Of a stretch of 50,327 bases of DNA, positions 1 through 33,319 are shown one piece after another. The DNA is from Macrostomum lignano. Its lineage: Eukaryota. The number at the start of each line of letters is the position of its first letter. Position 1 is the first letter of the stretch. Location of the stretch: assembly GCA_002269645.1 (NCBI GenBank), contig NIVC01001460.1, positions 50,422 to 100,748 of the forward strand, in the 5' to 3' direction. The notes under the pieces were generated by a model, which worked only from the letters and a program-made list of their open reading frames with translations, searched no databases and was not told the DNA's origin. The position numbers were made by a program, and so were the translations under genes.

Positions 1-3000
1 CAGCATCTCTAACTAGCCCTGTCGCTGTCAATATATAGAATTAAATGGAGAGCTTAGAAATGACACTCAATGGGGCTGATATACACAGGTGCAAAGATGA
101 CGCAGAGCCCGCTACTCTCAGCATCTCTAACTAGCCCTGTCGCTGTCAATATATAGAATTAAATGGAGAGCTTAGAAATGACACTCAATGGGGCTGATAT
201 ACACAGGTGCAAAGATGACGCAGAGCCCGCTACTCTCAGCATCTCTAACTAGCCCTGTCGCTGTCAATATATAGAATTAAATGGAGAGCTTAGAAATGAC
301 ACTCAATGGGGCTGATATACACAGGTGCAAAGATGACGCAGAGCCCGCTACTCTCAGCATCTCTAACTAGCCCTGTCGCTGTCAATATATAGAATTAAAT
401 GGAGAGCTTAGAAATGACACTCAATGGGGCTGATATACACAGGTGCAAAGATGACGCAGAGCCCGCTACTCTCAGCATCTCTAACTAGCCCTGTCGCTGT
501 CAATATATAGAATTAAATGGAGAGCTTAGAAATGACACTCAATGGGGCTGATATACACAGGTGCAAAGATGACGCAGAGCCCGCTACTCTCAGCATCTCT
601 AACTAGCCCTGTCGCTGTCAATATATAGAATTAAATGGAGAGCTTAGAAATGACACTCAATGGGGCTGATATACACAGGTGCAAAGATGACGCAGAGCCC
701 GCTACTCTCAGCATCTCTAACTAGCCCTGTCGCTGTCAATATATAGAATTAAATGGAGAGCTTAGAAATGACACTCAATGGGGCTGATATACACAGGTGC
801 AAAGATGACGCAGAGCCCGCTACTCTCAGCATCTCTAACTAGCCCTGTCGCTGTCAATATATAGAATTAAATGGAGAGCTTAGAAATGACACTCAATGGG
901 GCTGATATACACAGGTGCAAAGATGACGCAGAGCCCGCTACTCTCAGCATCTCTAACTAGCCCTGTCGCTGTCAATATATAGAATTAAATGGAGAGCTTA
1001 GAAATGACACTCAATGGGGCTGATATACACAGGTGCAAAGATGACGCAGAGCCCGCTACTCTCAGCATCTCTAACTAGCCCTGTCGCTGTCAATATATAG
1101 AATTAAATGGAGAGCTTAGAAATGACACTCAATGGGGCTGATATACACAGGTGCAAAGATGACGCAGAGCCCGCTACTCTCAGCATCTCTAACTAGCCCT
1201 GTCGCTGTCAATATATAGAATTAAATGGAGAGCTTAGAAATGACACTCAATGGGGCTGATATACACAGGTGCAAAGATGACGCAGAGCCCGCTACTCTCA
1301 GCATCTCTAACTAGCCCTGTCGCTGTCAATATATAGAATTAAATGGAGAGCTTAGAAATGACACTCAATGGGGCTGATATACACAGGTGCAAAGATGACG
1401 CAGAGCCCGCTACTCTCAGCATCTCTAACTAGCCCTGTCGCTGTCAATATATAGAATTAAATGGAGAGCTTAGAAATGACACTCAATGGGGCTGATATAC
1501 ACAGGTGCAAAGATGACGCAGAGCCCGCTACTCTCAGCATCTCTAACTAGCCCTGTCGCTGTCAATATATAGAATTAAATGGAGAGCTTAGAAATGACAC
1601 TCAATGGGGCTGATATACACAGGTGCAAAGATGACGCAGAGCCCGCTACTCTCAGCATCTCTAACTAGCCCTGTCGCTGTCAATATATAGAATTAAATGG
1701 AGAGCTTAGAAATGACACTCAATGGGGCTGATATACACAGGTGCAAAGATGACGCAGAGCCCGCTACTCTCAGCATCTCTAACTAGCCCTGTCGCTGTCA
1801 ATATATAGAATTAAATGGAGAGCTTAGAAATGACACTCAATGGGGCTGATATACACAGGTGCAAAGATGACGCAGAGCCCGCTACTCTCAGCATCTCTAA
1901 CTAGCCCTGTCGCTGTCAATATATAGAATTAAATGGAGAGCTTAGAAATGACACTCAATGGGGCTGATATACACAGGTGCAAAGATGACGCAGAGCCCGC
2001 TACTCTCAGCATCTCTAACTAGCCCTGTCGCTGTCAATATATAGAATTAAATGGAGAGCTTAGAAATGACACTCAATGGGGCTGATATACACAGGTGCAA
2101 AGATGACGCAGAGCCCGCTACTCTCAGCATCTCTAACTAGCCCTGTCGCTGTCAATATATAGAATTAAATGGAGAGCTTAGAAATGACACTCAATGGGGC
2201 TGATATACACAGGTGCAAAGATGACGCAGAGCCCGCTACTCTCAGCATCTCTAACTAGCCCTGTCGCTGTCAATATATAGAATTAAATGGAGAGCTTAGA
2301 AATGACACTCAATGGGGCTGATATACACAGGTGCAAAGATGACGCAGAGCCCGCTACTCTCAGCATCTCTAACTAGCCCTGTCGCTGTCAATATATAGAA
2401 TTAAATGGAGAGCTTAGAAATGACACTCAATGGGGCTGATATACACAGGTGCAAAGATGACGCAGAGCCCGCTACTCTCAGCATCTCTAACTAGCCCTGT
2501 CGCTGTCAATATATAGAATTAAATGGAGAGCTTAGAAATGACACTCAATGGGGCTGATATACACAGGTGCAAAGATGACGCAGAGCCCGCTACTCTCAGC
2601 ATCTCTAACTAGCCCTGTCGCTGTCAATATATAGAATTAAATGGAGAGCTTAGAAATGACACTCAATGGGGCTGATATACACAGGTGCAAAGATGACGCA
2701 GAGCCCGCTACTCTCAGCATCTCTAACTAGCCCTGTCGCTGTCAATATATAGAATTAAATGGAGAGCTTAGAAATGACACTCAATGGGGCTGATATACAC
2801 AGGTGCAAAGATGACGCAGAGCCCGCTACTCTCAGCATCTCTAACTAGCCCTGTCGCTGTCAATATATAGAATTAAATGGAGAGCTTAGAAATGACACTC
2901 AATGGGGCTGATATACACAGGTGCAAAGATGACGCAGAGCCCGCTACTCTCAGCATCTCTAACTAGCCCTGTCGCTGTCAATATATAGAATTAAATGGAG

Positions 3001-6000
3001 AGCTTAGAAATGACACTCAATGGGGCTGATATACACAGGTGCAAAGATGACGCAGAGCCCGCTACTCTCAGCATCTCTAACTAGCCCTGTCGCTGTCAAT
3101 ATATAGAATTAAATGGAGAGCTTAGAAATGACACTCAATGGGGCTGATATACACAGGTGCAAAGATGACGCAGAGCCCGCTACTCTCAGCATCTCTAACT
3201 AGCCCTGTCGCTGTCAATATATAGAATTAAATGGAGAGCTTAGAAATGACACTCAATGGGGCTGATATACACAGGTGCAAAGATGACGCAGAGCCCGCTA
3301 CTCTCAGCATCTCTAACTAGCCCTGTCGCTGTCAATATATAGAATTAAATGGAGAGCTTAGAAATGACACTCAATGGGGCTGATATACACAGGTGCAAAG
3401 ATGACGCAGAGCCCGCTACTCTCAGCATCTCTAACTAGCCCTGTCGCTGTCAATATATAGAATTAAATGGAGAGCTTAGAAATGACACTCAATGGGGCTG
3501 ATATACACAGGTGCAAAGATGACGCAGAGCCCGCTACTCTCAGCATCTCTAACTAGCCCTGTCGCTGTCAATATATAGAATTAAATGGAGAGCTTAGAAA
3601 TGACACTCAATGGGGCTGATATACACAGGTGCAAAGATGACGCAGAGCCCGCTACTCTCAGCATCTCTAACTAGCCCTGTCGCTGTCAATATATAGAATT
3701 AAATGGAGAGCTTAGAAATGACACTCAATGGGGCTGATATACACAGGTGCAAAGATGACGCAGAGCCCGCTACTCTCAGCATCTCTAACTAGCCCTGTCG
3801 CTGTCAATATATAGAATTAAATGGAGAGCTTAGAAATGACACTCAATGGGGCTGATATACACAGGTGCAAAGATGACGCAGAGCCCGCTACTCTCAGCAT
3901 CTCTAACTAGCCCTGTCGCTGTCAATATATAGAATTAAATGGAGAGCTTAGAAATGACACTCAATGGGGCTGATATACACAGGTGCAAAGATGACGCAGA
4001 GCCCGCTACTCTCAGCATCTCTAACTAGCCCTGTCGCTGTCAATATATAGAATTAAATGGAGAGCTTAGAAATGACACTCAATGGGGCTGATATACACAG
4101 GTGCAAAGATGACGCAGAGCCCGCTACTCTCAGCATCTCTAACTAGCCCTGTCGCTGTCAATATATAGAATTAAATGGAGAGCTTAGAAATGACACTCAA
4201 TGGGGCTGATATACACAGGTGCAAAGATGACGCAGAGCCCGCTACTCTCAGCATCTCTAACTAGCCCTGTCGCTGTCAATATATAGAATTAAATGGAGAG
4301 CTTAGAAATGACACTCAATGGGGCTGATATACACAGGTGCAAAGATGACGCAGAGCCCGCTACTCTCAGCATCTCTAACTAGCCCTGTCGCTGTCAATAT
4401 ATAGAATTAAATGGAGAGCTTAGAAATGACACTCAATGGGGCTGATATACACAGGTGCAAAGATGACGCAGAGCCCGCTACTCTCAGCATCTCTAACTAG
4501 CCCTGTCGCTGTCAATATATAGAATTAAATGGAGAGCTTAGAAATGACACTCAATGGGGCTGATATACACAGGTGCAAAGATGACGCAGAGCCCGCTACT
4601 CTCAGCATCTCTAACTAGCCCTGTCGCTGTCAATATATAGAATTAAATGGAGAGCTTAGAAATGACACTCAATGGGGCTGATATACACAGGTGCAAAGAT
4701 GACGCAGAGCCCGCTACTCTCAGCATCTCTAACTAGCCCTGTCGCTGTCAATATATAGAATTAAATGGAGAGCTTAGAAATGACACTCAATGGGGCTGAT
4801 ATACACAGGTGCAAAGATGACGCAGAGCCCGCTACTCTCAGCATCTCTAACTAGCCCTGTCGCTGTCAATATATAGAATTAAATGGAGAGCTTAGAAATG
4901 ACACTCAATGGGGCTGATATACACAGGTGCAAAGATGACGCAGAGCCCGCTACTCTCAGCATCTCTAACTAGCCCTGTCGCTGTCAATATATAGAATTAA
5001 ATGGAGAGCTTAGAAATGACACTCAATGGGGCTGATATACACAGGTGCAAAGATGACGCAGAGCCCGCTACTCTCAGCATCTCTAACTAGCCCTGTCGCT
5101 GTCAATATATAGAATTAAATGGAGAGCTTAGAAATGACACTCAATGGGGCTGATATACACAGGTGCAAAGATGACGCAGAGCCCGCTACTCTCAGCATCT
5201 CTAACTAGCCCTGTCGCTGTCAATATATAGAATTAAATGGAGAGCTTAGAAATGACACTCAATGGGGCTGATATACACAGGTGCAAAGATGACGCAGAGC
5301 CCGCTACTCTCAGCATCTCTAACTAGCCCTGTCGCTGTCAATATATAGAATTAAATGGAGAGCTTAGAAATGACACTCAATGGGGCTGATATACACAGGT
5401 GCAAAGATGACGCAGAGCCCGCTACTCTCAGCATCTCTAACTAGCCCTGTCGCTGTCAATATATAGAATTAAATGGAGAGCTTAGAAATGACACTCAATG
5501 GGGCTGATATACACAGGTGCAAAGATGACGCAGAGCCCGCTACTCTCAGCATCTCTAACTAGCCCTGTCGCTGTCAATATATAGAATTAAATGGAGAGCT
5601 TAGAAATGACACTCAATGGGGCTGATATACACAGGTGCAAAGATGACGCAGAGCCCGCTACTCTCAGCATCTCTAACTAGCCCTGTCGCTGTCAATATAT
5701 AGAATTAAATGGAGAGCTTAGAAATGACACTCAATGGGGCTGATATACACAGGTGCAAAGATGACGCAGAGCCCGCTACTCTCAGCATCTCTAACTAGCC
5801 CTGTCGCTGTCAATATATAGAATTAAATGGAGAGCTTAGAAATGACACTCAATGGGGCTGATATACACAGGTGCAAAGATGACGCAGAGCCCGCTACTCT
5901 CAGCATCTCTAACTAGCCCTGTCGCTGTCAATATATAGAATTAAATGGAGAGCTTAGAAATGACACTCAATGGGGCTGATATACACAGGTGCAAAGATGA

Positions 6001-9000
6001 CGCAGAGCCCGCTACTCTCAGCATCTCTAACTAGCCCTGTCGCTGTCAATATATAGAATTAAATGGAGAGCTTAGAAATGACACTCAATGGGGCTGATAT
6101 ACACAGGTGCAAAGATGACGCAGAGCCCGCTACTCTCAGCATCTCTAACTAGCCCTGTCGCTGTCAATATATAGAATTAAATGGAGAGCTTAGAAATGAC
6201 ACTCAATGGGGCTGATATACACAGGTGCAAAGATGACGCAGAGCCCGCTACTCTCAGCATCTCTAACTAGCCCTGTCGCTGTCAATATATAGAATTAAAT
6301 GGAGAGCTTAGAAATGACACTCAATGGGGCTGATATACACAGGTGCAAAGATGACGCAGAGCCCGCTACTCTCAGCATCTCTAACTAGCCCTGTCGCTGT
6401 CAATATATAGAATTAAATGGAGAGCTTAGAAATGACACTCAATGGGGCTGATATACACAGGTGCAAAGATGACGCAGAGCCCGCTACTCTCAGCATCTCT
6501 AACTAGCCCTGTCGCTGTCAATATATAGAATTAAATGGAGAGCTTAGAAATGACACTCAATGGGGCTGATATACACAGGTGCAAAGATGACGCAGAGCCC
6601 GCTACTCTCAGCATCTCTAACTAGCCCTGTCGCTGTCAATATATAGAATTAAATGGAGAGCTTAGAAATGACACTCAATGGGGCTGATATACACAGGTGC
6701 AAAGATGACGCAGAGCCCGCTACTCTCAGCATCTCTAACTAGCCCTGTCGCTGTCAATATATAGAATTAAATGGAGAGCTTAGAAATGACACTCAATGGG
6801 GCTGATATACACAGGTGCAAAGATGACGCAGAGCCCGCTACTCTCAGCATCTCTAACTAGCCCTGTCGCTGTCAATATATAGAATTAAATGGAGAGCTTA
6901 GAAATGACACTCAATGGGGCTGATATACACAGGTGCAAAGATGACGCAGAGCCCGCTACTCTCAGCATCTCTAACTAGCCCTGTCGCTGTCAATATATAG
7001 AATTAAATGGAGAGCTTAGAAATGACACTCAATGGGGCTGATATACACAGGTGCAAAGATGACGCAGAGCCCGCTACTCTCAGCATCTCTAACTAGCCCT
7101 GTCGCTGTCAATATATAGAATTAAATGGAGAGCTTAGAAATGACACTCAATGGGGCTGATATACACAGGTGCAAAGATGACGCAGAGCCCGCTACTCTCA
7201 GCATCTCTAACTAGCCCTGTCGCTGTCAATATATAGAATTAAATGGAGAGCTTAGAAATGACACTCAATGGGGCTGATATACACAGGTGCAAAGATGACG
7301 CAGAGCCCGCTACTCTCAGCATCTCTAACTAGCCCTGTCGCTGTCAATATATAGAATTAAATGGAGAGCTTAGAAATGACACTCAATGGGGCTGATATAC
7401 ACAGGTGCAAAGATGACGCAGAGCCCGCTACTCTCAGCATCTCTAACTAGCCCTGTCGCTGTCAATATATAGAATTAAATGGAGAGCTTAGAAATGACAC
7501 TCAATGGGGCTGATATACACAGGTGCAAAGATGACGCAGAGCCCGCTACTCTCAGCATCTCTAACTAGCCCTGTCGCTGTCAATATATAGAATTAAATGG
7601 AGAGCTTAGAAATGACACTCAATGGGGCTGATATACACAGGTGCAAAGATGACGCAGAGCCCGCTACTCTCAGCATCTCTAACTAGCCCTGTCGCTGTCA
7701 ATATATAGAATTAAATGGAGAGCTTAGAAATGACACTCAATGGGGCTGATATACACAGGTGCAAAGATGACGCAGAGCCCGCTACTCTCAGCATCTCTAA
7801 CTAGCCCTGTCGCTGTCAATATATAGAATTAAATGGAGAGCTTAGAAATGACACTCAATGGGGCTGATATACACAGGTGCAAAGATGACGCAGAGCCCGC
7901 TACTCTCAGCATCTCTAACTAGCCCTGTCGCTGTCAATATATAGAATTAAATGGAGAGCTTAGAAATGACACTCAATGGGGCTGATATACACAGGTGCAA
8001 AGATGACGCAGAGCCCGCTACTCTCAGCATCTCTAACTAGCCCTGTCGCTGTCAATATATAGAATTAAATGGAGAGCTTAGAAATGACACTCAATGGGGC
8101 TGATATACACAGGTGCAAAGATGACGCAGAGCCCGCTACTCTCAGCATCTCTAACTAGCCCTGTCGCTGTCAATATATAGAATTAAATGGAGAGCTTAGA
8201 AATGACACTCAATGGGGCTGATATACACAGGTGCAAAGATGACGCAGAGCCCGCTACTCTCAGCATCTCTAACTAGCCCTGTCGCTGTCAATATATAGAA
8301 TTAAATGGAGAGCTTAGAAATGACACTCAATGGGGCTGATATACACAGGTGCAAAGATGACGCAGAGCCCGCTACTCTCAGCATCTCTAACTAGCCCTGT
8401 CGCTGTCAATATATAGAATTAAATGGAGAGCTTAGAAATGACACTCAATGGGGCTGATATACACAGGTGCAAAGATGACGCAGAGCCCGCTACTCTCAGC
8501 ATCTCTAACTAGCCCTGTCGCTGTCAATATATAGAATTAAATGGAGAGCTTAGAAATGACACTCAATGGGGCTGATATACACAGGTGCAAAGATGACGCA
8601 GAGCCCGCTACTCTCAGCATCTCTAACTAGCCCTGTCGCTGTCAATATATAGAATTAAATGGAGAGCTTAGAAATGACACTCAATGGGGCTGATATACAC
8701 AGGTGCAAAGATGACGCAGAGCCCGCTACTCTCAGCATCTCTAACTAGCCCTGTCGCTGTCAATATATAGAATTAAATGGAGAGCTTAGAAATGACACTC
8801 AATGGGGCTGATATACACAGGTGCAAAGATGACGCAGAGCCCGCTACTCTCAGCATCTCTAACTAGCCCTGTCGCTGTCAATATATAGAATTAAATGGAG
8901 AGCTTAGAAATGACACTCAATGGGGCTGATATACACAGGTGCAAAGATGACGCAGAGCCCGCTACTCTCAGCATCTCTAACTAGCCCTGTCGCTGTCAAT

Positions 9001-10715
9001 ATATAGAATTAAATGGAGAGCTTAGAAATGACACTCAATGGGGCTGATATACACAGGTGCAAAGATGACGCAGAGCCCGCTACACTCAGCATCTCTAACT
9101 AGCCCTGTCGCTGTCAATATATAGAATTAAATGGAGAGCTTAGAAATGACACTCAATGGGGCTGATATACACAGGTGCAAAGATGACGCAGAGCCCGCTA
9201 CTCTCAGCATCTCTAACTAGCCCTGTCGCTGTCAATATATAGAATTAAATGGAGAGCTTAGAAATGACACTCAATGGGGCTGATATACACAGGTGCAAAG
9301 ATGACGCAGAGCCCGCTACTCTCAGCATCTCTAACTAGCCCTGTCGCTGTCAATATATAGAATTAAATGGAGAGCTTAGAAATGACACTCAATGGGGCTG
9401 ATATACACAGGTGCAAAGATGACGCAGAGCCCGCTACTCTCAGCATCTCTAACTAGCCCTGTCGCTGTCAATATATAGAATTAAATGGAGAGCTTAGAAA
9501 TGACACTCAATGGGGCTGATATACACAGGTGCAAAGATGACGCAGAGCCCGCTACTCTCAGCATCTCTAACTAGCCCTGTCGCTGTCAATATATAGAATT
9601 AAATGGAGAGCTTAGAAATGACACTCAATGGGGCTGATATACACAGGTGCAAAGATGACGCAGAGCCCGCTACTCTCAGCATCTCTAACTAGCCCTGTCG
9701 CTGTCAATATATAGAATTAAATGGAGAGCTTAGAAATGACACTCAATGGGGCTGATATACACAGGTGCAAAGATGACGCAGAGCCCGCTACTCTCAGCAT
9801 CTCTAACTAGCCCTGTCGCTGTCAATATATAGAATTAAATGGAGAGCTTAGAAATGACACTCAATGGGGCTGATATACACAGGTGCAAAGATGACGCAGA
9901 GCCCGCTACTCTCAGCATCTCTAACTAGCCCTGTCGCTGTCAATATATAGAATTAAATGGAGAGCTTAGAAATGACACTCAATGGGGCTGATATACACAG
10001 GTGCAAAGATGACGCAGAGCCCGCTACTCTCAGCATCTCTAACTAGCCCTGTCGCTGTCAATATATAGAATTAAATGGAGAGCTTAGAAATGACACTCAA
10101 TGGGGCTGATATACACAGGTGCAAAGATGACGCAGAGCCCGCTACACTCAGCATCTCTAACTAGCCCTGTCGCTGTCAATATATAGAATTAAATGGAGAG
10201 CTTAGAAATGACACTCAATGGGGCTGATATACACAGGTGCAAAGATGACGCAGAGCCCGCTACTCTCAGCATCTCTAACTAGCCCTGTCGCTGTCAATAT
10301 ATAGAATTAAATGGAGAGCTTAGAAATGACACTCAATGGGGCTGATATACACAGGTGCAAAGATGACGCAGAGCCCGCTACTCTCAGCATCTCTAACTAG
10401 CCCTGTCGCTGTCAATATATAGAATTAAATGGAGAGCTTAGAAATGACACTCAATGGGGCTGATATACACAGGTGCAAAGATGACGCAGAGCCCGCTACA
10501 CTCAGCATCTCTAACTAGCCCTGTCGCTGTCAATATATAGAATTAAATGGAGAGCTTAGAAATGACACTCAATGGGGCTGATATACACAGGTGCAAAGAT
10601 GACGCAGAGCCCGCTACTCTCAGCATCTCTAACTAGCCCTGTCGCTGTCAATATATAGAATTAAATGGAGAGCTTAGAAATGACACTCAATGGGGCTGAT
10701 ATACGCAGGTGCAAA
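1..10715. repeat. 118-bp tandem satellite array (90 full units plus a partial one; runs off the left edge)
   Basis: Unit CAGCATCTCTAACTAGCCC...GAGCCCGCTACTCT recurs at 1, 119, 3541 (30x118+1), 7081 and 10621. It ends at GCAAA 10715 before AT-rich unique sequence. Confidence 0.99.
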
Positions 10716-11408
10716 TATTGTTATTTACATAGTTATTTGAATAACTATAACTTCAAATAGTTTTTCGAAGGATTGTAGTTTTGTCTCTTGAAGTCTAATA
10801 TGTGTCTTTGTTTTTCTCCTTAAAGTAGTGTATCTGATTTTAGCTTTATTTTTGTTGGGATAGGGAAAATCTTGTGTTGTTTTATTGGTTTAAGTTTCGT
10901 CATTTTTTATATGGGGTATATTTAGAATATATCCTATTTTGAAACGGTAATTTTTTGCGCGTCATTTTTAGTTACTTAGAGGATATATTCGATTGTGTCA
11001 TTTCTACATTCTGCGTCATCCAAACGCCCCCACCTCCAGCATGCCCCACGCCACCTCCAGCCTGCCCCACCCCTCCTCCGGCCTGCTCCACTCTACATCC
11101 AGGTCTCTGAATCTAAAGTATCAAATCCTCATCGCTGAATCAACTCTTTTCCCACCTGCCAACCATACACAGACACTCTGCATGGGACACTGTATGGGCA
11201 GTCATGGAAATTGTACAATTTTTCAGTAACAAAGCATGCACACATTTGCTCTAAACTAAACTAAAAGAACAATTAAAGGATCAACTGCCTGCAAAATGAT
11301 CAGCAAAATCAATTCATGCACTGTTCGGGAGGGCTGCCCTGTGCTACAAAAATCAGTCAAATAACCCGTCTAGACCTGCAAGTTTTTCACCTATAACTCA
11401 CATTTCAG

Positions 11409-11752
11409 ATGCAGTCCCAGCGACTCAGAGCTGAGCCATCAGCTGCACTCAGCACTGGAGCAGTCAGGCTTCACCGAATCCCGAGCCGCATTGCAGAGCG
11501 CGGCTGCCGATGTCCTGCAGCAGATTCTGAGAAGTCGACTGGATGATAATCCATTTTTTGTGGTCGGCAGCTACTCAGAAGGCTGGGGCAACAACCTGAC
11601 GACACTGGACGGCAGAACTGACGCCAATTCCGACATTGATGTGATGCATTTGATTTCTGGCCGAGAATACCACCAGAAAAGTCTGTGCGAGTGCGATGGA
11701 GCTTCGGAGCAGCACGAGCTGGTGAACGGGCACATTCAGTGCTCAGGATTCG
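11409..11752 (+). CDS. cGAS/Mab-21-like nucleotidyltransferase (cGLR-type), internal exon with NTase motif
   Basis: Acceptor CACATTTCAG|A at 11408 and donor G|GTGAGT at 11753. Encodes ...FFVVGSYSEGW...NSDIDVM..., the hG[S]-x(n)-DxD pol-beta NTase signature. An in-frame stop at 11371 and no in-frame ATG imply an upstream exon that I could not resolve. Confidence 0.85.
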
Positions 11753-12122
11753 GTGAGTTCTCTCTTGGGGAGTGAGATTGTCTGGTAGTTTTGTTATGAC
11801 TGTTAGAGATTGCTAAGAAAACTTGGCAAGATTGTTGGTTTTAAATTTTTGTAGGATTGGTAAAAGTGGAGCAATGCTATGGAGGACTCAGTGAAAAACT
11901 GTTCATTTTAGCAGCTTTTTGCATTTTTAGGTAAGAAGACTCGAATTTAGGGAACTTATAGGTAGCCTGTGACCTCTCCGTAGTGAGTTTAGGGTGGGTG
12001 CAAATATCGTGTCATTTGGTTGGGCGGTTTCTAAAGCTGCATATTTCCCGAACAGTCCAAGGCATCACCGCACAGACTCAAAGCTGTATATTCCCCAATC
12101 GGGAACCGAATCGTTTTTACAG

Positions 12123-13567
12123 CCTCCAACCCTGCTCATGCGACACCCGGATGCCCGCTGAGGCCAGCGCTGGACAATGTCGACGCATGCCGTCTCTGCC
12201 GCTACCCGCCCATCACGCCGCTGCTGCCAAACCGCGTCTCCAACATCCCCCATCCGGTGTTGGAGGCTCTCCAGAAGGTTCTCACCTCCGCCTCATCGCC
12301 CTGTCACGTGGTGCACGCAGCCTCTCCTGACCGAGGAGGCGAAGAGCTCCGCGTGAGCACCAGCTTCCTGGAGAACCGGATGCTGCGAAGTCTCACTACC
12401 CTGCAAGGCCAACTGTTCGTCACACTCAAATACCTGGTCAAGAAGGTCATCTGTCACAAGAATGGCTTGAATTCCTACCACGTGAAGACCATCGCCTTCC
12501 GAATGGTGGCTGAGACGCCGGTCGAGCAGTGGAAGAAGGAGAACCTCGTGAGTCTCACGAGACAGTCGCTGCAGATGCTGCTCGACTGTGTGGAGAAGAG
12601 CCGAGAGCAGGACAGACAAACACCTGACACACCTGACCGATCTCGGGGTCGCATCATGAACCATTTCTTTCTCAGCGATGCGGCCATCTACCTCAAGGGT
12701 GCGGACAAGGAGAGAGCGGACCAGCATTTGGACGGCATCATGAGCACACTGAGAACAGGAATCGATCGGCTGCCCCAACTGCTGCAGCAGTTCATCGGCA
12801 GTCTCAGACCTGTGAGCGACTCAGGCACATTCTACTTCCACCCGTTCCAAATCCTGCCGGATCTGAGGCCGATGTCCCTCACGAAGTCCAGTGCTCTCGA
12901 GTACTATCAGATCTACGACGTGGTGAGAGAGTGTCTGGTGCGTCTCTCGCGCAGTGACTGCAGCCAGCGATCTCAGGAGTCGCTCACAGAGCTGATTGCC
13001 AGACTGCCAGACTGCACCCTCTCAGCACGGGAGGCTCTCAGAGCGCTGGCTTGCCTGAAGTTCGGCTACCGAGAAACTGCAGAGAGAGTCGTGAGCTCGT
13101 GCTTAGGTCACTCGGTGAGCAGAGGCATCGCTTGGTCTCGTGAGAAGTCGGCGACTGAAGCGACTGTGGAGTTCGTGATGCGGCATCTGAGCAGCCGCGA
13201 CTCGGCGTGGAAGTTTTGCTTTGAGTTCGACCAGCGACCGAAACTCGAGTTCTTGACAGGAGCTCTGAGGGAGTGCTTTCCCCTCCGGTTGTCGAGCAGA
13301 GCTGACCATTTCTACATGAACTTTGATGCTCTGCTGTGGGCTCTGCGGCTCGAGCTGCGGACTGATCGAGAAGCGTGCGCTCAGGACTGGATCCGGGATG
13401 TGGCTGAGAGAGAGGACTCGGATGAGCAGGAGGTGCTGGTTGCCGCTTTGAATTCTTCAAATCTGGAGCAGATTCTGGAAATAGTAAAGAAGCTGAAGAT
13501 GATGAGGGCAGATCTTCTCAGTTGGCTGAAGGCGAGACTTCTGGAAAAATGGAGCGATCGAACTTAG
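12123..13567 (+). CDS. cGAS/Mab-21-like nucleotidyltransferase, terminal exon
   Basis: Acceptor TTTTTACAG|CC at 12122 is phase-compatible (G|CC=Ala) with the previous exon. Encodes DNVDAC (candidate third acidic residue), ELRVSTSFLE (cf. WRxSFSxxE), LKYLVK and SYHVKT (cf. Mab-21/cGAS SYHxKT), then a long helical C-terminal extension to TAG at 13565-13567. Confidence 0.85.
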
Positions 13568-14674: not shown

Positions 14675-15339
14675 CCATCTGCATGTACCCGCCCTGGAGA
14701 TCTGCTCCCTCTTCCATCTGCATGTACCTGCCCCGGAGATCTGCTCCCTCTTCCATCTGCATGTACATCAATCTGCCCTGGAGATCTGCTCCCTCTTCCA
14801 TCTGCATGTACCTGCCCCGGAGATCTGCTCCCTCTTCCATCTGCATGTACATCAATCTGCCCCGGAGATCTGCTCCCTCTTCCATCTGCATGTACATCAA
14901 TCTGCCCCGGAGATCTGCTCCCTCTTCCATCTGCATGTACATCAATCTGCCCCGGAGATCTGCTCCCTCTTCCATCTGCATGTACATCAACCTGCCCCGG
15001 AGATCTGCTCCCTCTTCCATCTGCATGTACATCAACCTGCCCCGGAGATCTGCTCCCTCTTCCATCTGCATGTACATCAATCTGCCCCGGAGATCTGCTC
15101 CCTCTTCCATCTGCATGTACATCAATCTGCCCCGGAGATCTGCTCCCTCTTCCGTCTGCATGTACATCAATCTGCCCCGGAGATCTGCTCCCTCTTCCAT
15201 CTGCATGTACATCAACCTGCCCCGGAGATCTGCTCCCTCTTCCATCTGCATGTACATCAATCTGCCCCGGAGATCTGCTCCCTCTTCCATCTGCATGTAC
15301 ATCAATCTGCCCCGGAGATCTGCTCCCTCTTCCATCTGC
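14675..15339. repeat. 45-bp minisatellite (two early units shortened to 36 bp)
   Basis: Unit ATCAATCTGCCCCGGAGATCTGCTCCCTCTTCCATCTGCATGTAC, about 15 copies. Confidence 0.97.
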
Positions 15340-15515: not shown

Positions 15516-16820
15516 TCAAAATTTCAACCGCCTGGCTTTGCTTTGCCTTCAAGCAGAAATCGCTCTGAAGTGCTCCTTTACTTCACCGCCAGCCGCCAAC
15601 ATTGAAAAGCAAATTCGCATTTTCAAGCGGCTTCAATTCAGCTCATCAGTGTTTTCACCTGCGGTTTCTGATCACCGGAGTTGAGCAATAAAAAGGCTTC
15701 AGTCCTTAATTACCGCAGTGTGAGCTCTGGAGAAGCGCAGCTTGCAGCGGAGCGGAAAAAGCAGCCACCTCTACTCGTCTCAACCGCAGCCACCCGAGCA
15801 GCCCAGCTCCAGACCAGCCCAACTCAATGCTCAGAGGACAATGGGTGAATGCTGAGGTTTGAGGGCCGAGCCAGCAGCCTGCGAACGCGTGGCACAGAAG
15901 GCTCGCAGCAAATGCTTTGGGTAGGGGGGGGGGGGCTGATGTTTGTCTAGCAATGGCACAAAGAGAAGCTGTGTGAGCGCCAACCCTGCCTGCTCAAAGC
16001 ATTCATTGCCTGTGCGTTCTCAGCGAGACTATAGAGAACTCACTGCCTTGAGTATTCGGTTTGGAGAGTTTGAGATGAGGGCCTCGCAGACTCATAAGAA
16101 TAATAATAGGGGCTTTAAAGGCCGGCCTGCTTGGCTGTCCCTCTGTATTAAGATAGCAGAAAAATAAGCTTTTGTGTGCAGCATGGCAGACATTCAACTC
16201 ATTGGACAATTAAATGCTCACTAATTCATTTTCTAGACAGAATAGGTTATTATTTTTGCAGGTATTTGTTTAAATGGGTACCGCAAGCATTCTGATTGAT
16301 TGATTTGTTCGTGAATTAATCGATTTTTTATTGATTTCATGATTGGCTGCTTTTGCTGATGCCCTGGTGCTGGCACTCCTTGTAGAATATCATTCTTAAC
16401 TTTATTGCAAGACATTTAATACTGTTTTGTGTAGAGAACCGTTTCTTAGAAAGTGTTTATTAAGGAGGCTGGTTCTCGCCGTAAATACACTACAAAGGAA
16501 GGAACTTTTTCACTTTTTATGTAATAATCGTTATTGCTTTAGATGGGAGGCAAAACCACTGTCCATATTTTGATATGTTTTGCCTTTCTTACAGCACTAT
16601 TGATATTCATAAAGCTTTTTGTGTTTGTGGAAATACTCGATAATCATATTCAGCTTTCTTGTTTAATTTTTCGGCTGCTTTGTCTTCTGAATTTATTTTT
16701 TGTTTAGATCTGTTTTACTCACCTTTATGAAAAGTTTATGTGTGGAAGAAGTTTATTTTTTGATGTGTTAGTGAGTCTGTTTTTTTATTATTTAGTTACA
16801 TAGTTATTTAGTTAGTTCAT
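15516..16820 (+). repeat. Copy 1 of a ~1.3-kb duplicated non-coding element (no tRNA head)
   Basis: TCAAAATTTCAACCGCC...GATGTGTTAGTGAGTC aligns colinearly with 17301-18555, with scattered substitutions and small indels. Confidence 0.92.
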
Positions 16821-17300: not shown

Positions 17301-18551
17301 TCAAAATTTCAACCGCCTGACTTTGCCTTCAAGCTGAAATCGCACTGAAGTGCTTCTTTACTTCACCGCCAGCCACATCATTAAAAAGCGAATTCGCATT
17401 TTTGCATCAGTCTTTTCACCTGGGTTTCTGATCACCGGAGTTGAGCAATAAAAAGGCTTCAGTCCTTAATTACCGCAGTGTGAGCACTGGAGAAGCGCAG
17501 CTTGCAGCGGAGCGGAAAAAGCAGCCACCTCTACTCGTCTCAACCGCAGCCATCCAAGCAGCCCAGCTCCAGACCAGCCCAACTCAATGCTCAAAGGACA
17601 ATGGGCGAAAGCTGAGGTTTGAGGGCCGAGCCAGCAGCCTGCGAACGCGTGGCACAGAAGGCTCGCAGCAAATGCTTTGGGTAGGGGGTCTGATGTTTGT
17701 CTAGCAATGGCACAAAGAGAAGCTGTGTGAGCGCCAACCCTGCCTGCTCAAAGCATTCATTGCCGATGCGTTCTCAGCGAGACTATAGAGAACTCACTGC
17801 CTTGAGTATTCGGTTTGGATAGTTTGAGATGAGAGCCTCGAAGACTCATAAGAATAATAATAGGGGCTTTAAAGGCCGGCGTGCTTGGCGGTCCCTCTGT
17901 ATTAAGATAGCAGAAAAATAAGCTTTTGTGTGCAGCATGGCAGACATTCAACTCATTGGACAATTGAATGCTCACTAATTCATTTTCTAGACAGAATAGG
18001 TTATTATTTTTGCAGGTATTTGTTTAAATGGGTGCCGCAGGCATTCTGATTGATTGATTGGTTCGTGAATGATTCGATTTTTTATTGATTTATGATTGGC
18101 TGCTTCTGCTGATGCCCTGGTGCTGGCACTCCTTGTAGATTATCATTCTTAACTTTATCGCAAGACATTTAATACTGTTTTGTGCAGAGAAACGTTTCTT
18201 AGAAAGTGTTTATTAAGAAGACAGGTTTTCGCCGTAAATACACTGGCTACACTGCCTACAGAGATAGGAAGTTTTCACTTTTTTCGTATGAAAATTGTAT
18301 TGCTTTCGATAGGAGGCAGACCCAATGTTGAATATTTTGATATGTTTTGTCTTCCTTATACCTCTATTGATATTCGTAAAGCTTTTTGTGTTTGTGAAAA
18401 TACTCCATAATCATATTCAGCTTTCTTGTTCAATATTTCGGCTGCTTTGCCTTTTGAATTTATTTTGTTTAGATCTGTTTTACTCACCTTAATGGAAACT
18501 TCATCTGCGGAAGTTAATTTCTTTGATGTGTTAGTGAGTCAGTTTGTTTTT

Positions 18552-18555
<4 letters not shown>
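17301..18555 (+). repeat. Copy 2 of the ~1.3-kb duplicated element
   Basis: Colinear with 15516-16820. Begins directly after the tRNA-like head and ends in the (TTAG)n tract. Confidence 0.92.
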
Positions 18556-18877
<322 letters not shown>

Positions 18878-18949
18878 ATTAATATTAAAAATACATTTCA
18901 TGCGTGTTTATGCCTCAATAAAATGCGTTTTTTCTTCATCTCTCACATT

Positions 18950-19240
18950 GCCTCCCCTGTCTCCCCCCTCTCTCTGTCTCTTCCCATCTCTCCTCTCTCT
19001 CTGTCTCTTCCCATCTCTCCCCCTCTCTCTCTGTCTCTTCCCATCTCTCCCCTCTCTCTGTCTCTTCCCATCTCTCCCCTCTCTCTGTCTCTTCCCATCT
19101 CTCCCCTCTCTCTGTCTCTTCCCATCTCTCCCCCTTTCTCTCTGTCTCTTCCCATCTCCCCCCTCTCTCTGTCTCTTCCCATCTCTCCCCCTTTCTCTCT
19201 GTCTCTTCCCATCTTCCCCCTCTCTCTGTCTCCTCCTGTA
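18950..19240. repeat. CT-rich ~27-bp minisatellite
   Basis: CTCTCTCTGTCTCTTCCCATCTCTCCC-type units. The preceding ~70-bp flank is also repeated at 20870-20940. Confidence 0.9.
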
Positions 19241-19647
19241 ATAGGTCGTTTTGTCGGTAGTCTCTGATGGCCTCTCACACCAACTACCTTACACGCCTGC
19301 TACCCCTCTGCCACGACAGACAGAAGCTTCGAAGAACTGAGACAAGTCATTTTCTTAGTTTGAGCTCAAACTCTACTAAACTCGGCCGTGGAGAGCCTCG
19401 GCTCTTTCAATTGCATTGTATTTATAATGCTCAGCATTGTGCTCGGGGGCAGTGTTGGGGTGGTGGCGTGATATTTTTCCGCCTCACAAATCTTATGTGC
19501 TTTTTTGCATAGTTAGGTAGTTATATAAATTAACACAGAGAGGGCATGCATTGTCTGCGTGGCTGTTTTAGTGCAGGCAAATGGGTGGGTCTAACATTAA
19601 ATATCTACGATAAGTTTCTAATAGCATATCAGCGTTTTGAACTCTGA

Positions 19648-20742
19648 TACAGTGCAGGCCTTTGGCTTCCAAATGGTTAACTTGCACTTTTCCATGGCTG
19701 TTTGCTGACACAGTGCAGGCCTCTGGCTTCCAAATGGTTAACTTGCACTTTTCCATGGCTGTTTGCTGACACAGTGCAGGCCTCTGGCTTCCAAATGGTT
19801 AACTTGCACTTTTCCATGGCTGTTTGCTGACACAGTGCAGGCCTCTGGCTTCCAAATGGTGAACTTGCACTTTTCCATGGCTGTTTGCTGACACAGTGCA
19901 GGCCTCTGGCTTCCAAATGGTTAACTTGCACTTTTCCATGGCTGTTTGCTGACACAGTGCAGGCCTCTGGCTTCCAAATGGTGAACTTGCACTTTTCCAT
20001 GGCTGTTTGCTGACACAGTGCAGGCCTCTGGCTTCCAAATGGTTAACTTGCACTTTTCCATGGCTGTTTGCTGACACAGTGCAGGCCTCTGGCTTCCAAA
20101 TGGTTAACTTGCACTTTTCCATGGCTGTTTGCTGACACAGTGCAGGCCTCTGGCTTCCAAATGGTTAACTTGCACTTTTCCATGGCTGTTTGCTGACACA
20201 GTGCAGGCCTCTGGCTTCCAAATGGTGAACTTGCACTTTTCCATGGCTGTTTGCTGACACAGTGCAGGCCTCTGGCTTCCAAATGGTGAACTTGCACTTT
20301 TCCATGGCTGTTTGCTGACACAGTGCAGGCCTCTGGCTTCCAAATGGTTAACTTGCACTTTTCCATGGCTGTTTGCTGACACAGTGCAGACCTTTGGCTT
20401 CCAAATGGTGAACTTGCACTTTTTCATGGCTGTTTGCTGACACAGTGCAGGCCTCTGGCTTCCAAATGGTGAACTTGCACTTTTCCATGGCTGTTTGCTG
20501 ACACAGTGCAGGCCTCTGGCTTCCAAATGGTAAACTTGCACTTTTCCATGGCTGTTTGCTGACACAGTGCAGGCCTCTGGCTTCCAAATGGTTAACTTGC
20601 ACTTTTCCATGGCTGTTTGCTGACACAGTGCAGGCCTCTGGCTTCCAAATGGTTAACTTGCACTTTTCCATGGCTGTTTGCTGACACAGTGCAGGCCTCT
20701 GGCTTCCAAATGGTTAACTTGCACTTTTCCATGGCTGTTTGC
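19648..20742. repeat. 61-bp tandem repeat (~18 copies)
   Basis: Unit ACAGTGCAGGCCTCTGGCTTCCAAATGGTTAACTTGCACTTTTCCATGGCTGTTTGCTGAC. CTTGCAC recurs at 19681 and 19742. Confidence 0.97.
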
Positions 20743-20929
20743 TATCTTGATTGCAGTAAGCTTAATCTTTTATATAAGCAGCAAACAGAATTTTGTAAAT
20801 GCAAAAATTTTTTATTTATGATTTTGTGTGTACTTGTGCTTTGTTTTTATTGCGCACAGTTAAAATCAAAAATAAATTTCATGCGTGTTTGTGCCTTAAT
20901 AAAATGCGTTTTTTCTTCTTGTCTCACTT

Positions 20930-21150
20930 TGCCTCCCCTGTCTCCCCCTCTCTCTGTCTCCTCCCATCTCTCTCCCCTCTCTCTGTCTCCTCCCATCTCT
21001 CTCCCCCTCTCTGTCTCTTCCCATCTCTCTCCCCCTCTCTCTGTCTCTTCCCATCTCTCTCCCCCTCTCTCTGTCTCTTCCCATCTCTCTCCCCCTCTCT
21101 CTGTCTCCTCCCATCTCTCTCCCCCTCTTTTTCTGTCTCTCTGTCTCGAC
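20930..21150. repeat. CT-rich minisatellite, same family as 18950-19240
   Basis: CCCCTCTCTCTGTCTCTTCCCATCTCTCT units preceded by the shared flank TTTCATGCGTGTTT...AATAAAATGCGTTTTTTCTTC. Confidence 0.88.
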
Positions 21151-21373
21151 TCACACCAATTGTGTACATACTTACCGTACGCTCTCTATCCACCTGTCTA
21201 CTCTCTCTCCCCTCTAACCTCGCCTATCTAGTAACTTTTACAACGCCACTTGTCGCTAATTTTCACTTGACCTGACGAAGAAATACAATAATTTGGAATA
21301 TCGGCAATTCAATTGAACTGACTTTTTCCAGTCCTTTCTACCGTGTCAGTGCCTGAGATTGGAGGTGCCATCC

Positions 21374-21416
<43 letters not shown>

Positions 21417-21487
21417 GTCTCTCTCTGCCTATATTTGTAGCTCTTAACTTACAGCCCTGAATTCGAAATATCGGCAATTAAATTAGG

Positions 21488-24327: not shown

Positions 24328-24493
24328 TTCTGAGGATCAGTGGATTATCTAGCAATAAGACTATCTGGGTCAATTATTAGGAAAAGGCATGGTATTCTAC
24401 TTCAAGTGTGACTCTAAGAGGTGAAATGATTCCGTTTTAACAGCCTGATTATTGAATCAAAAGCGTGATATTTTATGAGATTGACAGGCTCAC

Positions 24494-24940
24494 TTATCCA
24501 CCCTATCGATCGGCTGATTAGCGGTCGGCCCAAGCGACCCGATGCAGATCACAAAACAGCCGATGCCCACGTCCATCAGCCCTGTGCCGAAATTGAGCGT
24601 CTTGCTGAAATCGTTATTCCAGCAGGGCTGGTCCCTAGCGAAGATGCACACAGTTGTGCTGATGTACACCATGGATCGGTAGATCGCCAGCAAGTCATTG
24701 TACGGAGGTCTGGATAGCTTCTTCGCTCCATTGTCAGCTATGGCATGAGTAGTGATGGGCAGAGTTGATGAGGCAGCAGACCCCTGAGACAGGCTCTTGT
24801 GCAGCAGGCAGCCGAGGTAGGTCACCACGCAGACGGCATTGAAGGCCAAGGAAAAGATGGCGTAGCGCTCTATTGGGAAGTCGGTCACGCAGATCACGAA
24901 TGGGATTGTCAGAATGCAGAATTGAAGCCAGGATGCTGGG
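24494..24940 (-). CDS. PIGW: PIG-W/GWT1 (GPI inositol acyltransferase)-like internal exon
   Basis: Acceptor CTCCAG| at 24941 and donor AA|GTGAGC at 24493. Encodes hydrophobic WLQFCILTIPFVICVT...YRSMVYISTTVCIFARD...FSKTLNFGTGLMDVGIGCFV, matching the PIG-W YR...FAKTExxGxxLMDxGVGxFV block, though divergent. Confidence 0.75.
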
Positions 24941-25039
24941 CTGGAGTTTCAGCAAATGGCTTGCTTAGTAGGTTTTCGGGTTGTGGTGGGTTATTGTGCT
25001 TGGTTGTCCCCCGATTCTGTGTTTGGGGTAATTCTAAAG

Positions 25040-26370: not shown

Positions 26371-26687
26371 CATCCATAGAACTATGAATAAATAAATCAT
26401 AGTCTAATACTGTGCATGTATTTCTGAGATCTACTTTGTTTCACTTCGATCCCCTACTTAGTATCTGTGTATCAGTAGTATATTCAGTACGCTGGTATGA
26501 TTTTCTTCTAGTTCACTTTTTAAAAAGTCCTTTAAAATAATTTCAAAGTCTCAGTTTTGACAGGATGAACAAGTAAAAAACAAATTGCTTGGCTCACTGA
26601 TCAGATAGCAAAGAGATGTAGTCAATATTCATTTTCAGGTACTTATAATTAAGACAAAGATAAATATTCTTGTGTTCTATCTGTGAT

Positions 26688-27158
26688 AGAACACAGAGGG
26701 TGAGAGGGGAACACAGAGGGTGAGAGGGGAACATAGAGGGTGAGAGGGGAACACATAGAGTGAGAGGGGAACACAGAGGGTGAGAGGGGAACACAGAGGG
26801 TGAGAGGGGAACACAGAGGGTGAGAGGGGAACACAGATGGTGAGAGGGGAACACATAGAGTGAGAGGGGAACACAGAGGGTGAGAGGGGAACACACAGGG
26901 TGAGAGGGGAACACAGAGGGTGAGAGGGGAACACAGAGGGTGAGAGGGGAACACAGAGGGTGAGAGGGGAACATAGAGGGTGAGAGGGGAACACAGAGGG
27001 TGAGAGGGGAACACAGAGGGTGAGGGGGGAACACACACATGGCGAGAGGGGAACACAGAGGGTGAGAGGGGAACACAGAGGGTGAGAGGGGAACACAGAG
27101 GGTGAGAGGGGAACACAGAGGGTGAGAGGGGAACACAGAGGGTGAGAGGGCAACACAG
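26688..27158. repeat. 20-bp minisatellite ACACAGAGGGTGAGAGGGGA
   Basis: About 23 tandem units. Confidence 0.96.
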
Positions 27159-27538: not shown

Positions 27539-27621
27539 GGTCCTGTGCTCGATTCCCTGCGTGCACCGGGACGGACTAGGGGTTGCTGCCAGTGAGTCAA
27601 AATCAGGCATTGAAAAGGGGA

Positions 27622-29122: not shown

Positions 29123-29169
29123 AAGCGTCGCAGATATGCAAACAAAAAACGGCAAGATAGGGTAAACTT

Positions 29170-33318: not shown

Positions 33319-33319
33319 T

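What the first reader, a model, noticed from the sequence alone, without database searches (positions are those of the whole stretch)
11409..13567. Spliced cGAS-like receptor (cGLR) with intact catalytic motifs, ~0.7 kb from a giant satellite
Seen: joining 11409-11752 to 12123-13567 (canonical GT-AG, phases match) gives a ~595-aa protein. It carries GS(11566-11571)..SDIDVM(11629-11646), DNVD, ELRVSTSFLE and SYHVKT(12473-12490). The ORF track splits it and misses the link. Established: these motifs define the Mab-21/cGAS fold, and animal cGLRs that keep the acidic triad make cyclic dinucleotide messengers on sensing nucleic acid. Inference: an uncharacterised, probably active innate-immune sensor in a poorly studied invertebrate lineage, possibly with a novel ligand or product.
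Basis: partly seen in the sequence, partly recalled or inferred. Interest (0 to 1): 0.78.

Follow-up and report, generated by a model that had tools for sequence, protein, structure and literature searches.

The report
Flatworm cGAS-like gene, 5' end missing
The two exons are real and encode the enzyme half of a cGAS-like immune-sensor protein from the flatworm Macrostomum lignano, but relatives of it were already catalogued and screened in 2023, and this copy lacks its start and ankyrin-repeat exons in the window.

Summary
Exon 11409-11752 joins exon 12123-13567 through a GTGAG...CAG intron, in phase, to give a 595-codon open frame. GS, SDIDVM, DNVD, ELRVSTSFLE and SYHVKT sit at the stated coordinates. 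The window is the 3' end of Macrostomum lignano contig NIVC01001460.1. The gene is GenBank PAA67719.1, 'hypothetical protein BOX15_Mlig022050g1, partial'.

A family profile matches cGAS/cGLR profiles at hhalign probability 99.6%, with D128 aligned to human cGAS D319. PDB sequence hits are only cGLR1, cGAS and Mab21L1. The best fold matches are cGAS, MB21D2 and CdnE. GS, DxD and the third Asp are nearly invariant across paralogs.

- The ATG at 11409 is out of frame. Full-length paralogs (870-1,575 aa) carry N-terminal ankyrin repeats, encoded upstream of the same conserved acceptor. No such exon lies in the 11.4 kb upstream, which is 0.7 kb of unique DNA plus a 10.7-kb satellite.
- It is one of at least 31 diverged M. 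lignano paralog clusters.
- Li et al. 2023 already listed M. lignano ankyrin-cGLRs and screened five. None is among their 15 characterised actives.

Enzyme activity, ligand, product and a STING partner remain untested. This is a new member of a known kind, of modest interest.

The parts
1..10715 (.). 118-bp satellite, 90.8 copies at 99% identity, cut by the window start. It lies where the intron or upstream region before the NTase exon should be.
   Evidence: Tandem Repeats Finder. No copy is present in paralog loci L002 or L003.
10716..11408 (+). 693 bp of AT-rich unique DNA (GC 38.5%) ending in the acceptor TTTCAG (11403-11408). It holds no ankyrin or linker coding sequence.
   Evidence: tblastn with 36 paralogs, P0037 and P0052 finds nothing upstream of 11404. 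The acceptor fits both the cis (CAG) and the spliced-leader ([T/C]TNCAG) motifs.
11409..11752 (+). Internal exon: 1 nt of a split codon, 114 codons, then 1 nt. It encodes the N-terminal spine helix, the G-S loop (11566-11571) and D-I-D (11632-11640). It is the counterpart of exon B of paralog P0006 (aa 295-409).
   Evidence: The ATG at 11409 is out of frame.
11753..12122 (+). 370-nt GT-AG intron (GTGAG...TTTTTACAG), GC 42%.
   Evidence: Paralogs have an intron at the same position: 80 nt in P0006, and P0007 likewise has an intron there.
12123..13567 (+). Terminal coding exon, ending in TAG. It encodes the third catalytic Asp (codon 12173-12175, in ALDNVD), LRVSTSFLE (12347-12373), SYHVKT (12473-12490), the Mab-21_C helix bundle and the C-terminal domain.
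12422..12601 (+). Stretch matched by Pfam Mab-21_C (PF20266), aa 215-274 of the 595-aa product.
   Evidence: E 1.2e-4 and 22.5 bits, against a cut-off of 24.1. All 12 family members scanned match, with best E 8.6e-13.
12809..13564 (+). Family-specific C-terminal domain of about 250 aa, mostly helical. It is modelled with confidence but has no solved structural analogue.
   Evidence: AF2 pLDDT 85.1 and pTM 0.87. The best Foldseek PDB hit has E 0.76, to the TRIF N-terminal domain.

Best explanation
These are the last two coding exons of a Macrostomum lignano gene (GenBank PAA67719.1). The gene belongs to a large, lineage-specific family of proteins with three modules: N-terminal ankyrin repeats, a divergent cGAS-like nucleotidyltransferase (cGLR) domain, and a helical C-terminal domain of about 250 aa.

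The exons in the window encode the whole cGLR domain and the C-terminal domain. The exons for the ankyrin repeats, the linker and the start codon are not in the window. They must be cis-spliced onto the conserved acceptor at 11408/11409, across an intron of at least 11.4 kb that holds the 118-bp satellite. This is inferred, not shown.

By homology, the domain most likely works as other cGLRs do (inferred). A ligand or partner, possibly read through the ankyrin or C-terminal modules, releases the enzyme. The G-S loop and the acidic triad then bind two Mg2+ ions and NTPs and make a nucleotide second messenger. The triad is D75, D77 and D132 of the 595-aa product, or D71, D73 and D128 in PAA67719.1 numbering. 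The downstream receptor is not identified.
For: - Identity and family: a 100% match to PAA67719.1. There were 35 further hits, essentially all from M. lignano, at 31-86% identity, many with N-terminal Ank domains. About 31 clusters at less than 50% identity span the cGLR and C-terminal regions, and all 10 checked are M. lignano.
- cGLR homology: hhalign of the family against human cGAS plus 8 bivalve and coral cGLRs gives probability 99.55%, E 1.9e-23 and 191 columns, with D128 on cGAS D319. hmmsearch of the PDB hits only cGLR1 8GJY (E 3.5e-6), cGAS (about 1e-5) and Mab21L1. The top Foldseek matches are cGAS, MB21D2 and CdnE, with probability 0.92-1.0.
- Motif: GS, X20, DIDV, X52, LDN fits the Li et al. 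2023 spacing criteria. G49, S50, D71, D73 and D128 are at least 90% conserved, including in four Li et al. screen proteins.
- Secondary structure: the model places strands at FVV before GS, at DVMHLI and at ALDNVD.
- No sign of decay: an intact 595-codon frame, and 132 of 138 family-conserved positions kept, within the range of full-length paralogs.
- Exon structure: P0006 and P0007 have introns at both equivalent positions, with the ankyrin and linker exon directly upstream.
- Upstream exon: UniProt model P0052 is 100% identical over the shared 210 aa. It joins an ankyrin-tail and linker exon (…NGHHQVVSSLIKAQADV…QLDFG) to this same acceptor.
- Transcript evidence: the GenBank models derive from RNA-seq assemblies.
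Against: - No start codon or ankyrin exon lies within 11.4 kb upstream. The paralog introns at that position are only 105 and 587 nt.
- The GenBank CDS is 5'-partial.
- Pfam PF03281 does not hit. PF20266 is below its threshold for this protein.
- The N-terminal part of the core aligns with cGAS only weakly: E 5.5e-4 at probability 30% for GS, and 6 columns for DxD.
- The AF2 core is poorly modelled. Residues 79-138 and 170-188 have pLDDT below 50, and Foldseek E-values are 0.02-0.09.
- Five relatives purified by Li et al. are not among their 15 characterised active enzymes.
- No STING was found or excluded for this species. Wu et al. [quoted passage not shown]
Confidence: 0.55

Rival explanations
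1. This is a truncated gene copy. A duplication or rearrangement, together with the satellite expansion, cut the ankyrin and start exons away. What remains is a transcribed but untranslatable, or N-terminally truncated, young pseudogene or gene fragment.
For: - No coding exon lies in the 11.4 kb upstream.
- The only ATG at the exon start is out of frame and ends after 45 codons.
- A spliced leader ending in ATG and joined at this acceptor would read the same wrong frame (SL sequence from PMC8629364; frame).
- The first in-frame Met lies after the G-S loop, in DIDVM.
- The GenBank model is 'partial'.
- The M. lignano DV1 assembly holds 180 Mb of duplicated blocks, and 15% of the genome is tandem repeats.
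Against: - The 595-codon frame is intact, and 96% of family-conserved positions are kept.
- The gene model has transcript support.
- Model P0052 links an ankyrin-tail exon to an identical exon, although it may come from a second locus.
Confidence: 0.3
2. The domain is a non-catalytic Mab-21-fold module. Like MiD51 or Mab21L1, it would bind a nucleotide or serve as a scaffold, with the ankyrin and C-terminal modules doing the signalling.
For: - The NTase half is very divergent. PF03281 does not hit.
- The GS-to-DxD spacing (20) and the DxD-to-D spacing (52) sit at the extremes of the accepted ranges.
- Val replaces the usual Q/T before GS.
- MiD51 is among the fold hits.
- No M. lignano member is among the 15 characterised active enzymes.
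Against: - The G-S loop and all three acidic residues are nearly invariant across paralogs that are only 33-59% identical. That is hard to explain without catalysis or metal and NTP binding.
- Sequence hits go to cGLR1 and cGAS at E 1e-5 to 1e-6, but to Mab21L1 only at E 1.2.
Confidence: 0.2
3. It is an OAS-like enzyme that makes linear 2'-5' oligonucleotides rather than a cyclic messenger.
For: OAS and cGAS share this fold. OAS3 domain I appears among the fold hits at rank 28 with E 1.8.
Against: All significant sequence and profile hits are to cGAS/cGLR, and none is to OAS. The WRxSFS-like LRVSTSFLE and SYHxKT signatures are of the Mab-21/cGAS type.
Confidence: 0.05

Closest known systems
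Macrostomum lignano ankyrin-cGLR fusions listed by Li et al. 2023 (PAA86972.1, PAA45980.1, PAA57558.1, PAA93208.1, PAA68676.1; Tables S2 and S3 of PMC9980059)
   Same: - Same species and same architecture: Ank_2 domains N-terminal to the cGLR domain.
- They align over the cGLR domain and the start of the C-terminal domain at 33-39% identity.
- They share GS[FY].[ED][AG]W[GA], SD[IV]D, LR[VF]S[TF], LQGQ, YH[AV]K and HFF.
   Different: - These are different paralogs. PAA67719.1 was not found in the stored, truncated supplement text.
- The copy in this window lacks its ankyrin and start exons.
- None of the five is flagged as one of the 15 characterised active enzymes.
Crassostrea virginica cGLR1 (PDB 8GJY), human and mouse cGAS, human MB21D2 (PDB 7LT1)
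   Same: - They share the caged NTase and helix-bundle fold, the G-S loop and the acidic triad.
- They share the WRLSFS/LRVSTSF strand and the SYHxKT helix.
- They are the best sequence hits in the PDB and the best fold hits. hhalign probability is 99.6%.
   Different: - Identity is only 11-17%.
- The N-lobe is shorter: 52 residues between DxD and the third Asp, against 91 in human cGAS.
- There is no cGAS-type Zn thumb between the LRVSTSFLE strand and SYHVKT.
- It has an extra C-terminal domain of about 250 aa and, in paralogs, N-terminal ankyrin repeats.
- A family-specific set of nearly invariant Cys and His residues (H84, C91, C136, H172) has no known role.
Stylophora pistillata cGLRs fused to ankyrin repeats or death domains (Li et al. 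2023)
   Same: The cGLR core is fused to protein-interaction repeats, a minority architecture found in 13% of cGLRs.
   Different: They come from a different phylum. No sequence comparison was made here, and their C-terminal domain was not shown to be shared.
Mab21L1 and MiD51 (non-immune Mab-21-fold proteins)
   Same: They share the fold and the Mab-21_C domain.
   Different: Mab21L1 matches the family profile only at E 1.2. M. lignano has a separate canonical Mab-21 protein, PAA76228.1, with pfam03281 at E 4e-91.

Membership tests
Animal cGLR (criteria of Li et al. 2023) | Active-site motif h[QT]GS X8-20 [DE]h[DE]h X50-90 h[DE]h | tested here: met
   The sequence reads VVGS, X20, DIDV, X52, LDN (criteria). 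Val replaces Q/T, as in some accepted bivalve cGLRs (SVGS). Both spacings are at the limits of the ranges. G, S and the three Asp are at least 90% conserved in the family.
Animal cGLR (criteria of Li et al. 2023) | Sequence homology over the C-terminal part of the NTase core and the helix bundle | tested here: met
   hhalign probability 99.55%, E 1.9e-23, residues 125-338, with D128 on cGAS D319. hmmsearch of the PDB gives cGLR1 at 3.5e-6 and cGAS at about 1e-5.
Animal cGLR (criteria of Li et al. 2023) | Sequence homology over the N-terminal NTase core (spine helix, G-S loop, DxD strand) | tested here: inconclusive
   A sub-profile hhalign aligns GS with G212/S213 at E 5.5e-4 but probability 30%. 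SDIDVM aligns with NEFDVM over only 6 columns. Pfam PF03281 gives no hit.
Animal cGLR (criteria of Li et al. 2023) | Predicted structural homology to cGLR and CD-NTase enzymes | tested here: met
   The top four Foldseek PDB hits are cGAS (4K96, 7UXW), MB21D2 (7LT1) and CdnE (7X4T), with probability 0.92-1.0 and TM on the target of 0.44-0.52. Caveats: E-values are 0.02-0.09, and core residues 79-138 and 170-188 have pLDDT below 50.
Animal cGLR (criteria of Li et al. 2023) | The three acidic residues cluster in space at the active site | not testable with these tools
Only the secondary structure is: the residues lie on or next to predicted strands 73-78 and 126-131.
Animal cGLR (functional definition) | Ligand-stimulated synthesis of a nucleotide second messenger | not testable with these tools
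   This needs biochemistry. Five relatives were in the Li et al. screen, and their 'Note' column, which flags the 15 characterised active enzymes, is blank.
Pfam Mab-21 (PF03281) and Mab-21_C (PF20266) | Score above the Pfam gathering cut-off | tested here: not met
   PF03281 gives no hit. PF20266 scores 22.5 bits against a cut-off of 24.1 for this protein. The family clearly matches PF20266: 12 of 12 members, best E 8.6e-13.
M. lignano ankyrin-cGLR-CTD family (full-length gene) | N-terminal ankyrin-repeat exon(s) and a start codon upstream of the conserved acceptor | tested here: not met
   Neither is present anywhere in the window. The upstream 50 kb of the contig could not be fetched. P0052 shows that such an exon is joined to an identical exon in another assembly's model.
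cGAS-STING pathway | A STING receptor encoded in the same genome | tested here: inconclusive
   A search with the human STING C-terminal domain reached only vertebrates and a hemichordate (357 candidates). The word index cannot reach a flatworm STING. M. lignano is absent from Li et al. Table S5.

The most novel reading that the evidence does not exclude
The M. lignano ankyrin-cGLR-CTD proteins could be a flatworm-specific family of pattern-recognition receptors, expanded to at least 31 diverged paralog clusters. They would use the ankyrin repeats or the structurally unmatched C-terminal domain to sense ligands, and would signal through a nucleotide messenger to a receptor other than canonical STING. 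This would be in a phylum generally held to have lost cGAS-STING. The copy studied here would be an active member whose first intron has been inflated by a satellite of at least 10.7 kb.
Probability: 0.2. Interest if true: 0.7.

Novelty: new member of a known kind. Interest (0 to 1): 0.33.

Why it matters
[quoted passage not shown] 2023). The flatworm Schistosoma mansoni lacks both cGAS and STING (Wu et al. 2014). A large, conserved cGLR expansion in the free-living, genetically tractable M. lignano is therefore a usable entry point. It allows two questions to be asked: what cGLRs do when canonical STING may be absent, and what appended ankyrin and C-terminal modules contribute.

This particular copy adds little beyond that. 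It is one paralog among dozens, annotated already as a partial hypothetical protein, and its family was already recognised and sampled biochemically.

Two points here go beyond what Li et al. reported:
- The upstream intron, or a breakpoint, is occupied by a satellite.
- The C-terminal domain is modelled with confidence but has no match among solved structures.

Tried and rejected
- The exhaustive representative search was run on an alignment that still held the ankyrin columns. It returned 625,000 hits, mostly ankyrin proteins. Only the roughly 31 hits spanning the cGLR region were usable.
- The STING search with the human C-terminal domain has too short a reach and says nothing about M. lignano.
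- Literature searches for Macrostomum with STING or cGAS, and for cGLR with ankyrin or flatworm, found nothing specific.
- The upstream part of contig NIVC01001460.1 could not be fetched. The locus returned lies inside the window.
- PAA67719.1 and six paralog accessions were sought in the Li et al. supplements and not found. Tables S1 and S2 are truncated in the held copy, so absence means nothing.
- The ATG at 11409 was rejected as a start codon because it is out of frame.
- Spliced-leader trans-splicing at 11409 was rejected as a route to this protein. The leader's terminal ATG falls in the same wrong frame.
- The N-terminus of UniProt model P0037 (137 aa, not ankyrin) is not encoded in the window, and its C-terminus is a frame-shifted artefact.
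- dN/dS was not attempted. Only paralogs at 58% identity or less have DNA available, so synonymous sites would be saturated.
- The satellite, the spacer, the intron and the 3' flank have no similarity to paralog loci.
- A weak lead links the C-terminal domain to the TRIF N-terminal domain: Pfam E 0.065 in one member and Foldseek E 0.76. It is not significant and is not used.

Full report
[quoted passage not shown] The gene lies on contig NIVC01001460.1 (100,748 bp). The window is the last 50,327 bp of that contig.

**Observation.**
- GS is at 11566-11571, SDIDVM at 11629-11646, DNVD at 12173-12184, ELRVSTSFLE at 12344-12373 and SYHVKT at 12473-12490.
- Exon 11409-11752 ends G|GTGAG. Exon 12123-13567 follows TTTTTACAG. 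The split codon G|CC gives Ala, and the joined frame has 595 codons ending in TAG.
- Both splice sites fit the motifs reported for M. lignano (GT[G/A]AG and CAG; PMC8629364).
- Exon GC content is 55-57%, against 42% for the intron.
- The GenBank annotation of this assembly derives from an RNA-seq-based transcriptome (PMC5730564), and it uses the same junction.
- The full-length paralog genes P0006 and P0007 have introns at exactly the equivalent positions.

**The 5' end.** 11409 is the first base after a conserved acceptor (TTTCAG|A). The ATG at 11409-11411 is one base out of frame with the GS/DIDVM frame and ends after 45 codons. The M. lignano spliced leader ends in ATG. If it were trans-spliced here it would also read that wrong frame.

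Full-length paralogs are 870-1,575 aa long. They carry about 250-350 aa or more of ankyrin repeats plus a linker, encoded by exon(s) that end 105 nt (P0006) or 587 nt (P0007) upstream of the equivalent acceptor.

No such coding sequence exists anywhere in the window. tblastn with 36 paralogs, P0037 and P0052 found none. Upstream of the exon lie 693 bp of AT-rich unique DNA and then the 118-bp satellite (1-10715; 90.8 copies at 99% identity; cut by the window edge).

UniProt model P0052, from the older ML2 assembly, is 100% identical to this gene over the shared 210 aa. It joins an ankyrin-tail and linker exon (…NGHHQVVSSLIKAQADV…PPKQLDFG) to this very acceptor. Two readings follow:
- The gene is complete, with an intron of at least 11.4 kb inflated by the satellite.
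- This copy is a truncated duplicate.

I could not fetch the upstream 50 kb of the contig to decide. The coding region shows no decay. The frame is intact, and 132 of 138 positions that are at least 90% conserved in diverged paralogs are kept, which is within the range of full-length paralogs.

**What the protein is.** On this protein alone, Pfam finds only Mab-21_C (PF20266), at 22.5 bits and just under the 24.1 cut-off. The NTase model PF03281 gives nothing. phmmer against the PDB gives cGAS at E about 0.04 around SYHVKT. Family-level evidence is much stronger.
- All 12 scanned members hit Mab-21_C, with best E 8.6e-13.
- A family profile without the ankyrin columns hits, in the whole PDB, only 'cGAS-like receptor 1' 8GJY (E 3.5e-6), cGAS chains (about 1e-5) and Mab21L1 (E 1.2).
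- hhalign against a profile of human cGAS plus eight bivalve and coral cGLRs gives probability 99.55%, E 1.9e-23 and 191 columns. Those sequences come from Li et al. Table S3. D128 (PAA67719.1 numbering; the first D of DNVD) aligns with human cGAS D319.
- The N-terminal third aligns only weakly. GS aligns with G212/S213 at E 5.5e-4 and probability 30%, and SDIDVM aligns with NEFDVM over 6 columns.

An AlphaFold2 model (pLDDT 73.9, pTM 0.79) has low confidence in core residues 79-138 and 170-188. Even so, its best PDB matches are cGAS, MB21D2 and CdnE, at probability 0.92-1.0, E 0.02-0.09 and TM on the target of 0.44-0.52.

The motif VVGS, X20, DIDV, X52, LDN fits the Li et al. 2023 criterion h[QT]GS X8-20 [DE]h[DE]h X50-90 h[DE]h, except that Val stands where Q/T is usual. 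Both spacings are at the limits of the ranges. G49, S50, D71, D73 and D128 are at least 90% conserved across paralogs that are only 33-59% identical.

There is no cGAS-type zinc thumb between LRVSTSFLE and SYHVKT. Instead the family has its own nearly invariant Cys and His positions (H84, C91, C136, H172), whose role is unknown.

**C-terminal domain.** Residues 340-591 are conserved throughout the family. They are modelled with confidence (pLDDT 85.1, pTM 0.87, mostly helical). They have no significant match in the PDB (best E 0.76). Their function is unknown.

**Family size and spread.** About 31 clusters at less than 50% identity span the cGLR and C-terminal regions. All ten that were checked are M. 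lignano. The only members from elsewhere are 1-3 kb metagenome fragments, one of them filed under a Kangiellaceae MAG.

**Prior knowledge.** Li et al. [quoted passage not shown] Their Table S2 lists M. lignano accessions with N-terminal Ank_2 domains. Their Table S3 shows that five M. lignano proteins (#89-93) were purified without the ankyrin part for the 140-enzyme screen.

Four of those five were aligned with this protein and are 33-39% identical, with the same signatures. Their 'Note' field, which flags the 15 characterised active enzymes, is blank, and Macrostomum is never named in the main text. The family is therefore already recognised as predicted cGLRs, and no activity has been reported for it.

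**Mechanism.**
- Shown: the fold family, the motif conservation and the exon structure.
- Inferred: a metal-dependent nucleotidyltransferase that makes a nucleotide messenger on activation, regulated by the ankyrin or C-terminal modules.
- Unknown: the ligand, the product and the receptor.

A STING search with the human domain could not reach flatworms. Wu et al. [quoted passage not shown]

**Verdict.** This is a new member of a known kind. It is a 5'-incomplete paralog of an already catalogued M. lignano ankyrin-cGLR family, next to (or interrupted by) a large satellite. Interest is modest.

Noticed in passing
window 1-10715: A 118-bp satellite with 90.8 copies at 99% identity runs off the window start. 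It occupies the position where paralogs have a 0.1-0.6 kb intron before the NTase exon. No copy is present in two paralog loci.
   Followed up: partly
window 14691-15339: A 45-bp tandem array (14.7 copies, 95% identity) produces spurious ORFs of 227-284 aa in four reading frames, just downstream of the gene.
   Followed up: no
window 15720-15917 and 17480-17677: A duplicated segment of about 200 bp is used as extra 3' 'exons' in UniProt model A0A1I8JJC3 (P0037) of this locus. That model also frame-shifts the true C-terminus.
   Followed up: partly
window 31900-41000, minus strand: Three tandem copies of about 3.8 kb (87-99% identical) each carry an ORF with a glycosyltransferase DXD sugar-binding region (Pfam PF04488, E 2e-7 to 2e-6).
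   Followed up: partly
window 47523-48257, minus strand: An ORF encodes a class C GPCR seven-transmembrane domain (Pfam 7tm_3, E 1.2e-68). It is probably one exon of a larger gene.
   Followed up: no
window 18530-29123, 41474-47422 and 49841-50327: Mini- and microsatellites are unusually dense. Examples are a 17-bp unit x167 (21514-24325), a 17-bp unit x80 (25012-26371), a 61-bp unit x18 (19644-20743), TGGA x326 (41474-42776) and a 16-bp unit x41 (46305-46954). The window is largely repeats.
   Followed up: no
P0031 (MEE4247562.1, 'Kangiellaceae bacterium' MAG); P0047, P0048, P0050, P0051 (JGI metagenome contigs of 1-3 kb): These proteins are 38-41% identical to this flatworm family and are filed under a bacterial MAG or marine metagenomes. 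They are most likely eukaryotic (flatworm-like) DNA in the bins, and the only family members seen outside M. lignano.
   Followed up: partly
P0005 (UniProt A0A1I8FXA2), a paralog model: This model starts with MQSQRLRAE…, the same out-of-frame ATG reading as window 11409. The ab initio model then switches to the true frame. The out-of-frame ATG is therefore conserved in at least one paralog and misleads gene predictors.
   Followed up: no
L003 8190-11161 and 22619-25442: The P0007 locus holds two tandem copies of the cGLR exons, about 90% identical. The GenBank model spans 19 kb across both, so local tandem duplication is part of the family's expansion.
   Followed up: no
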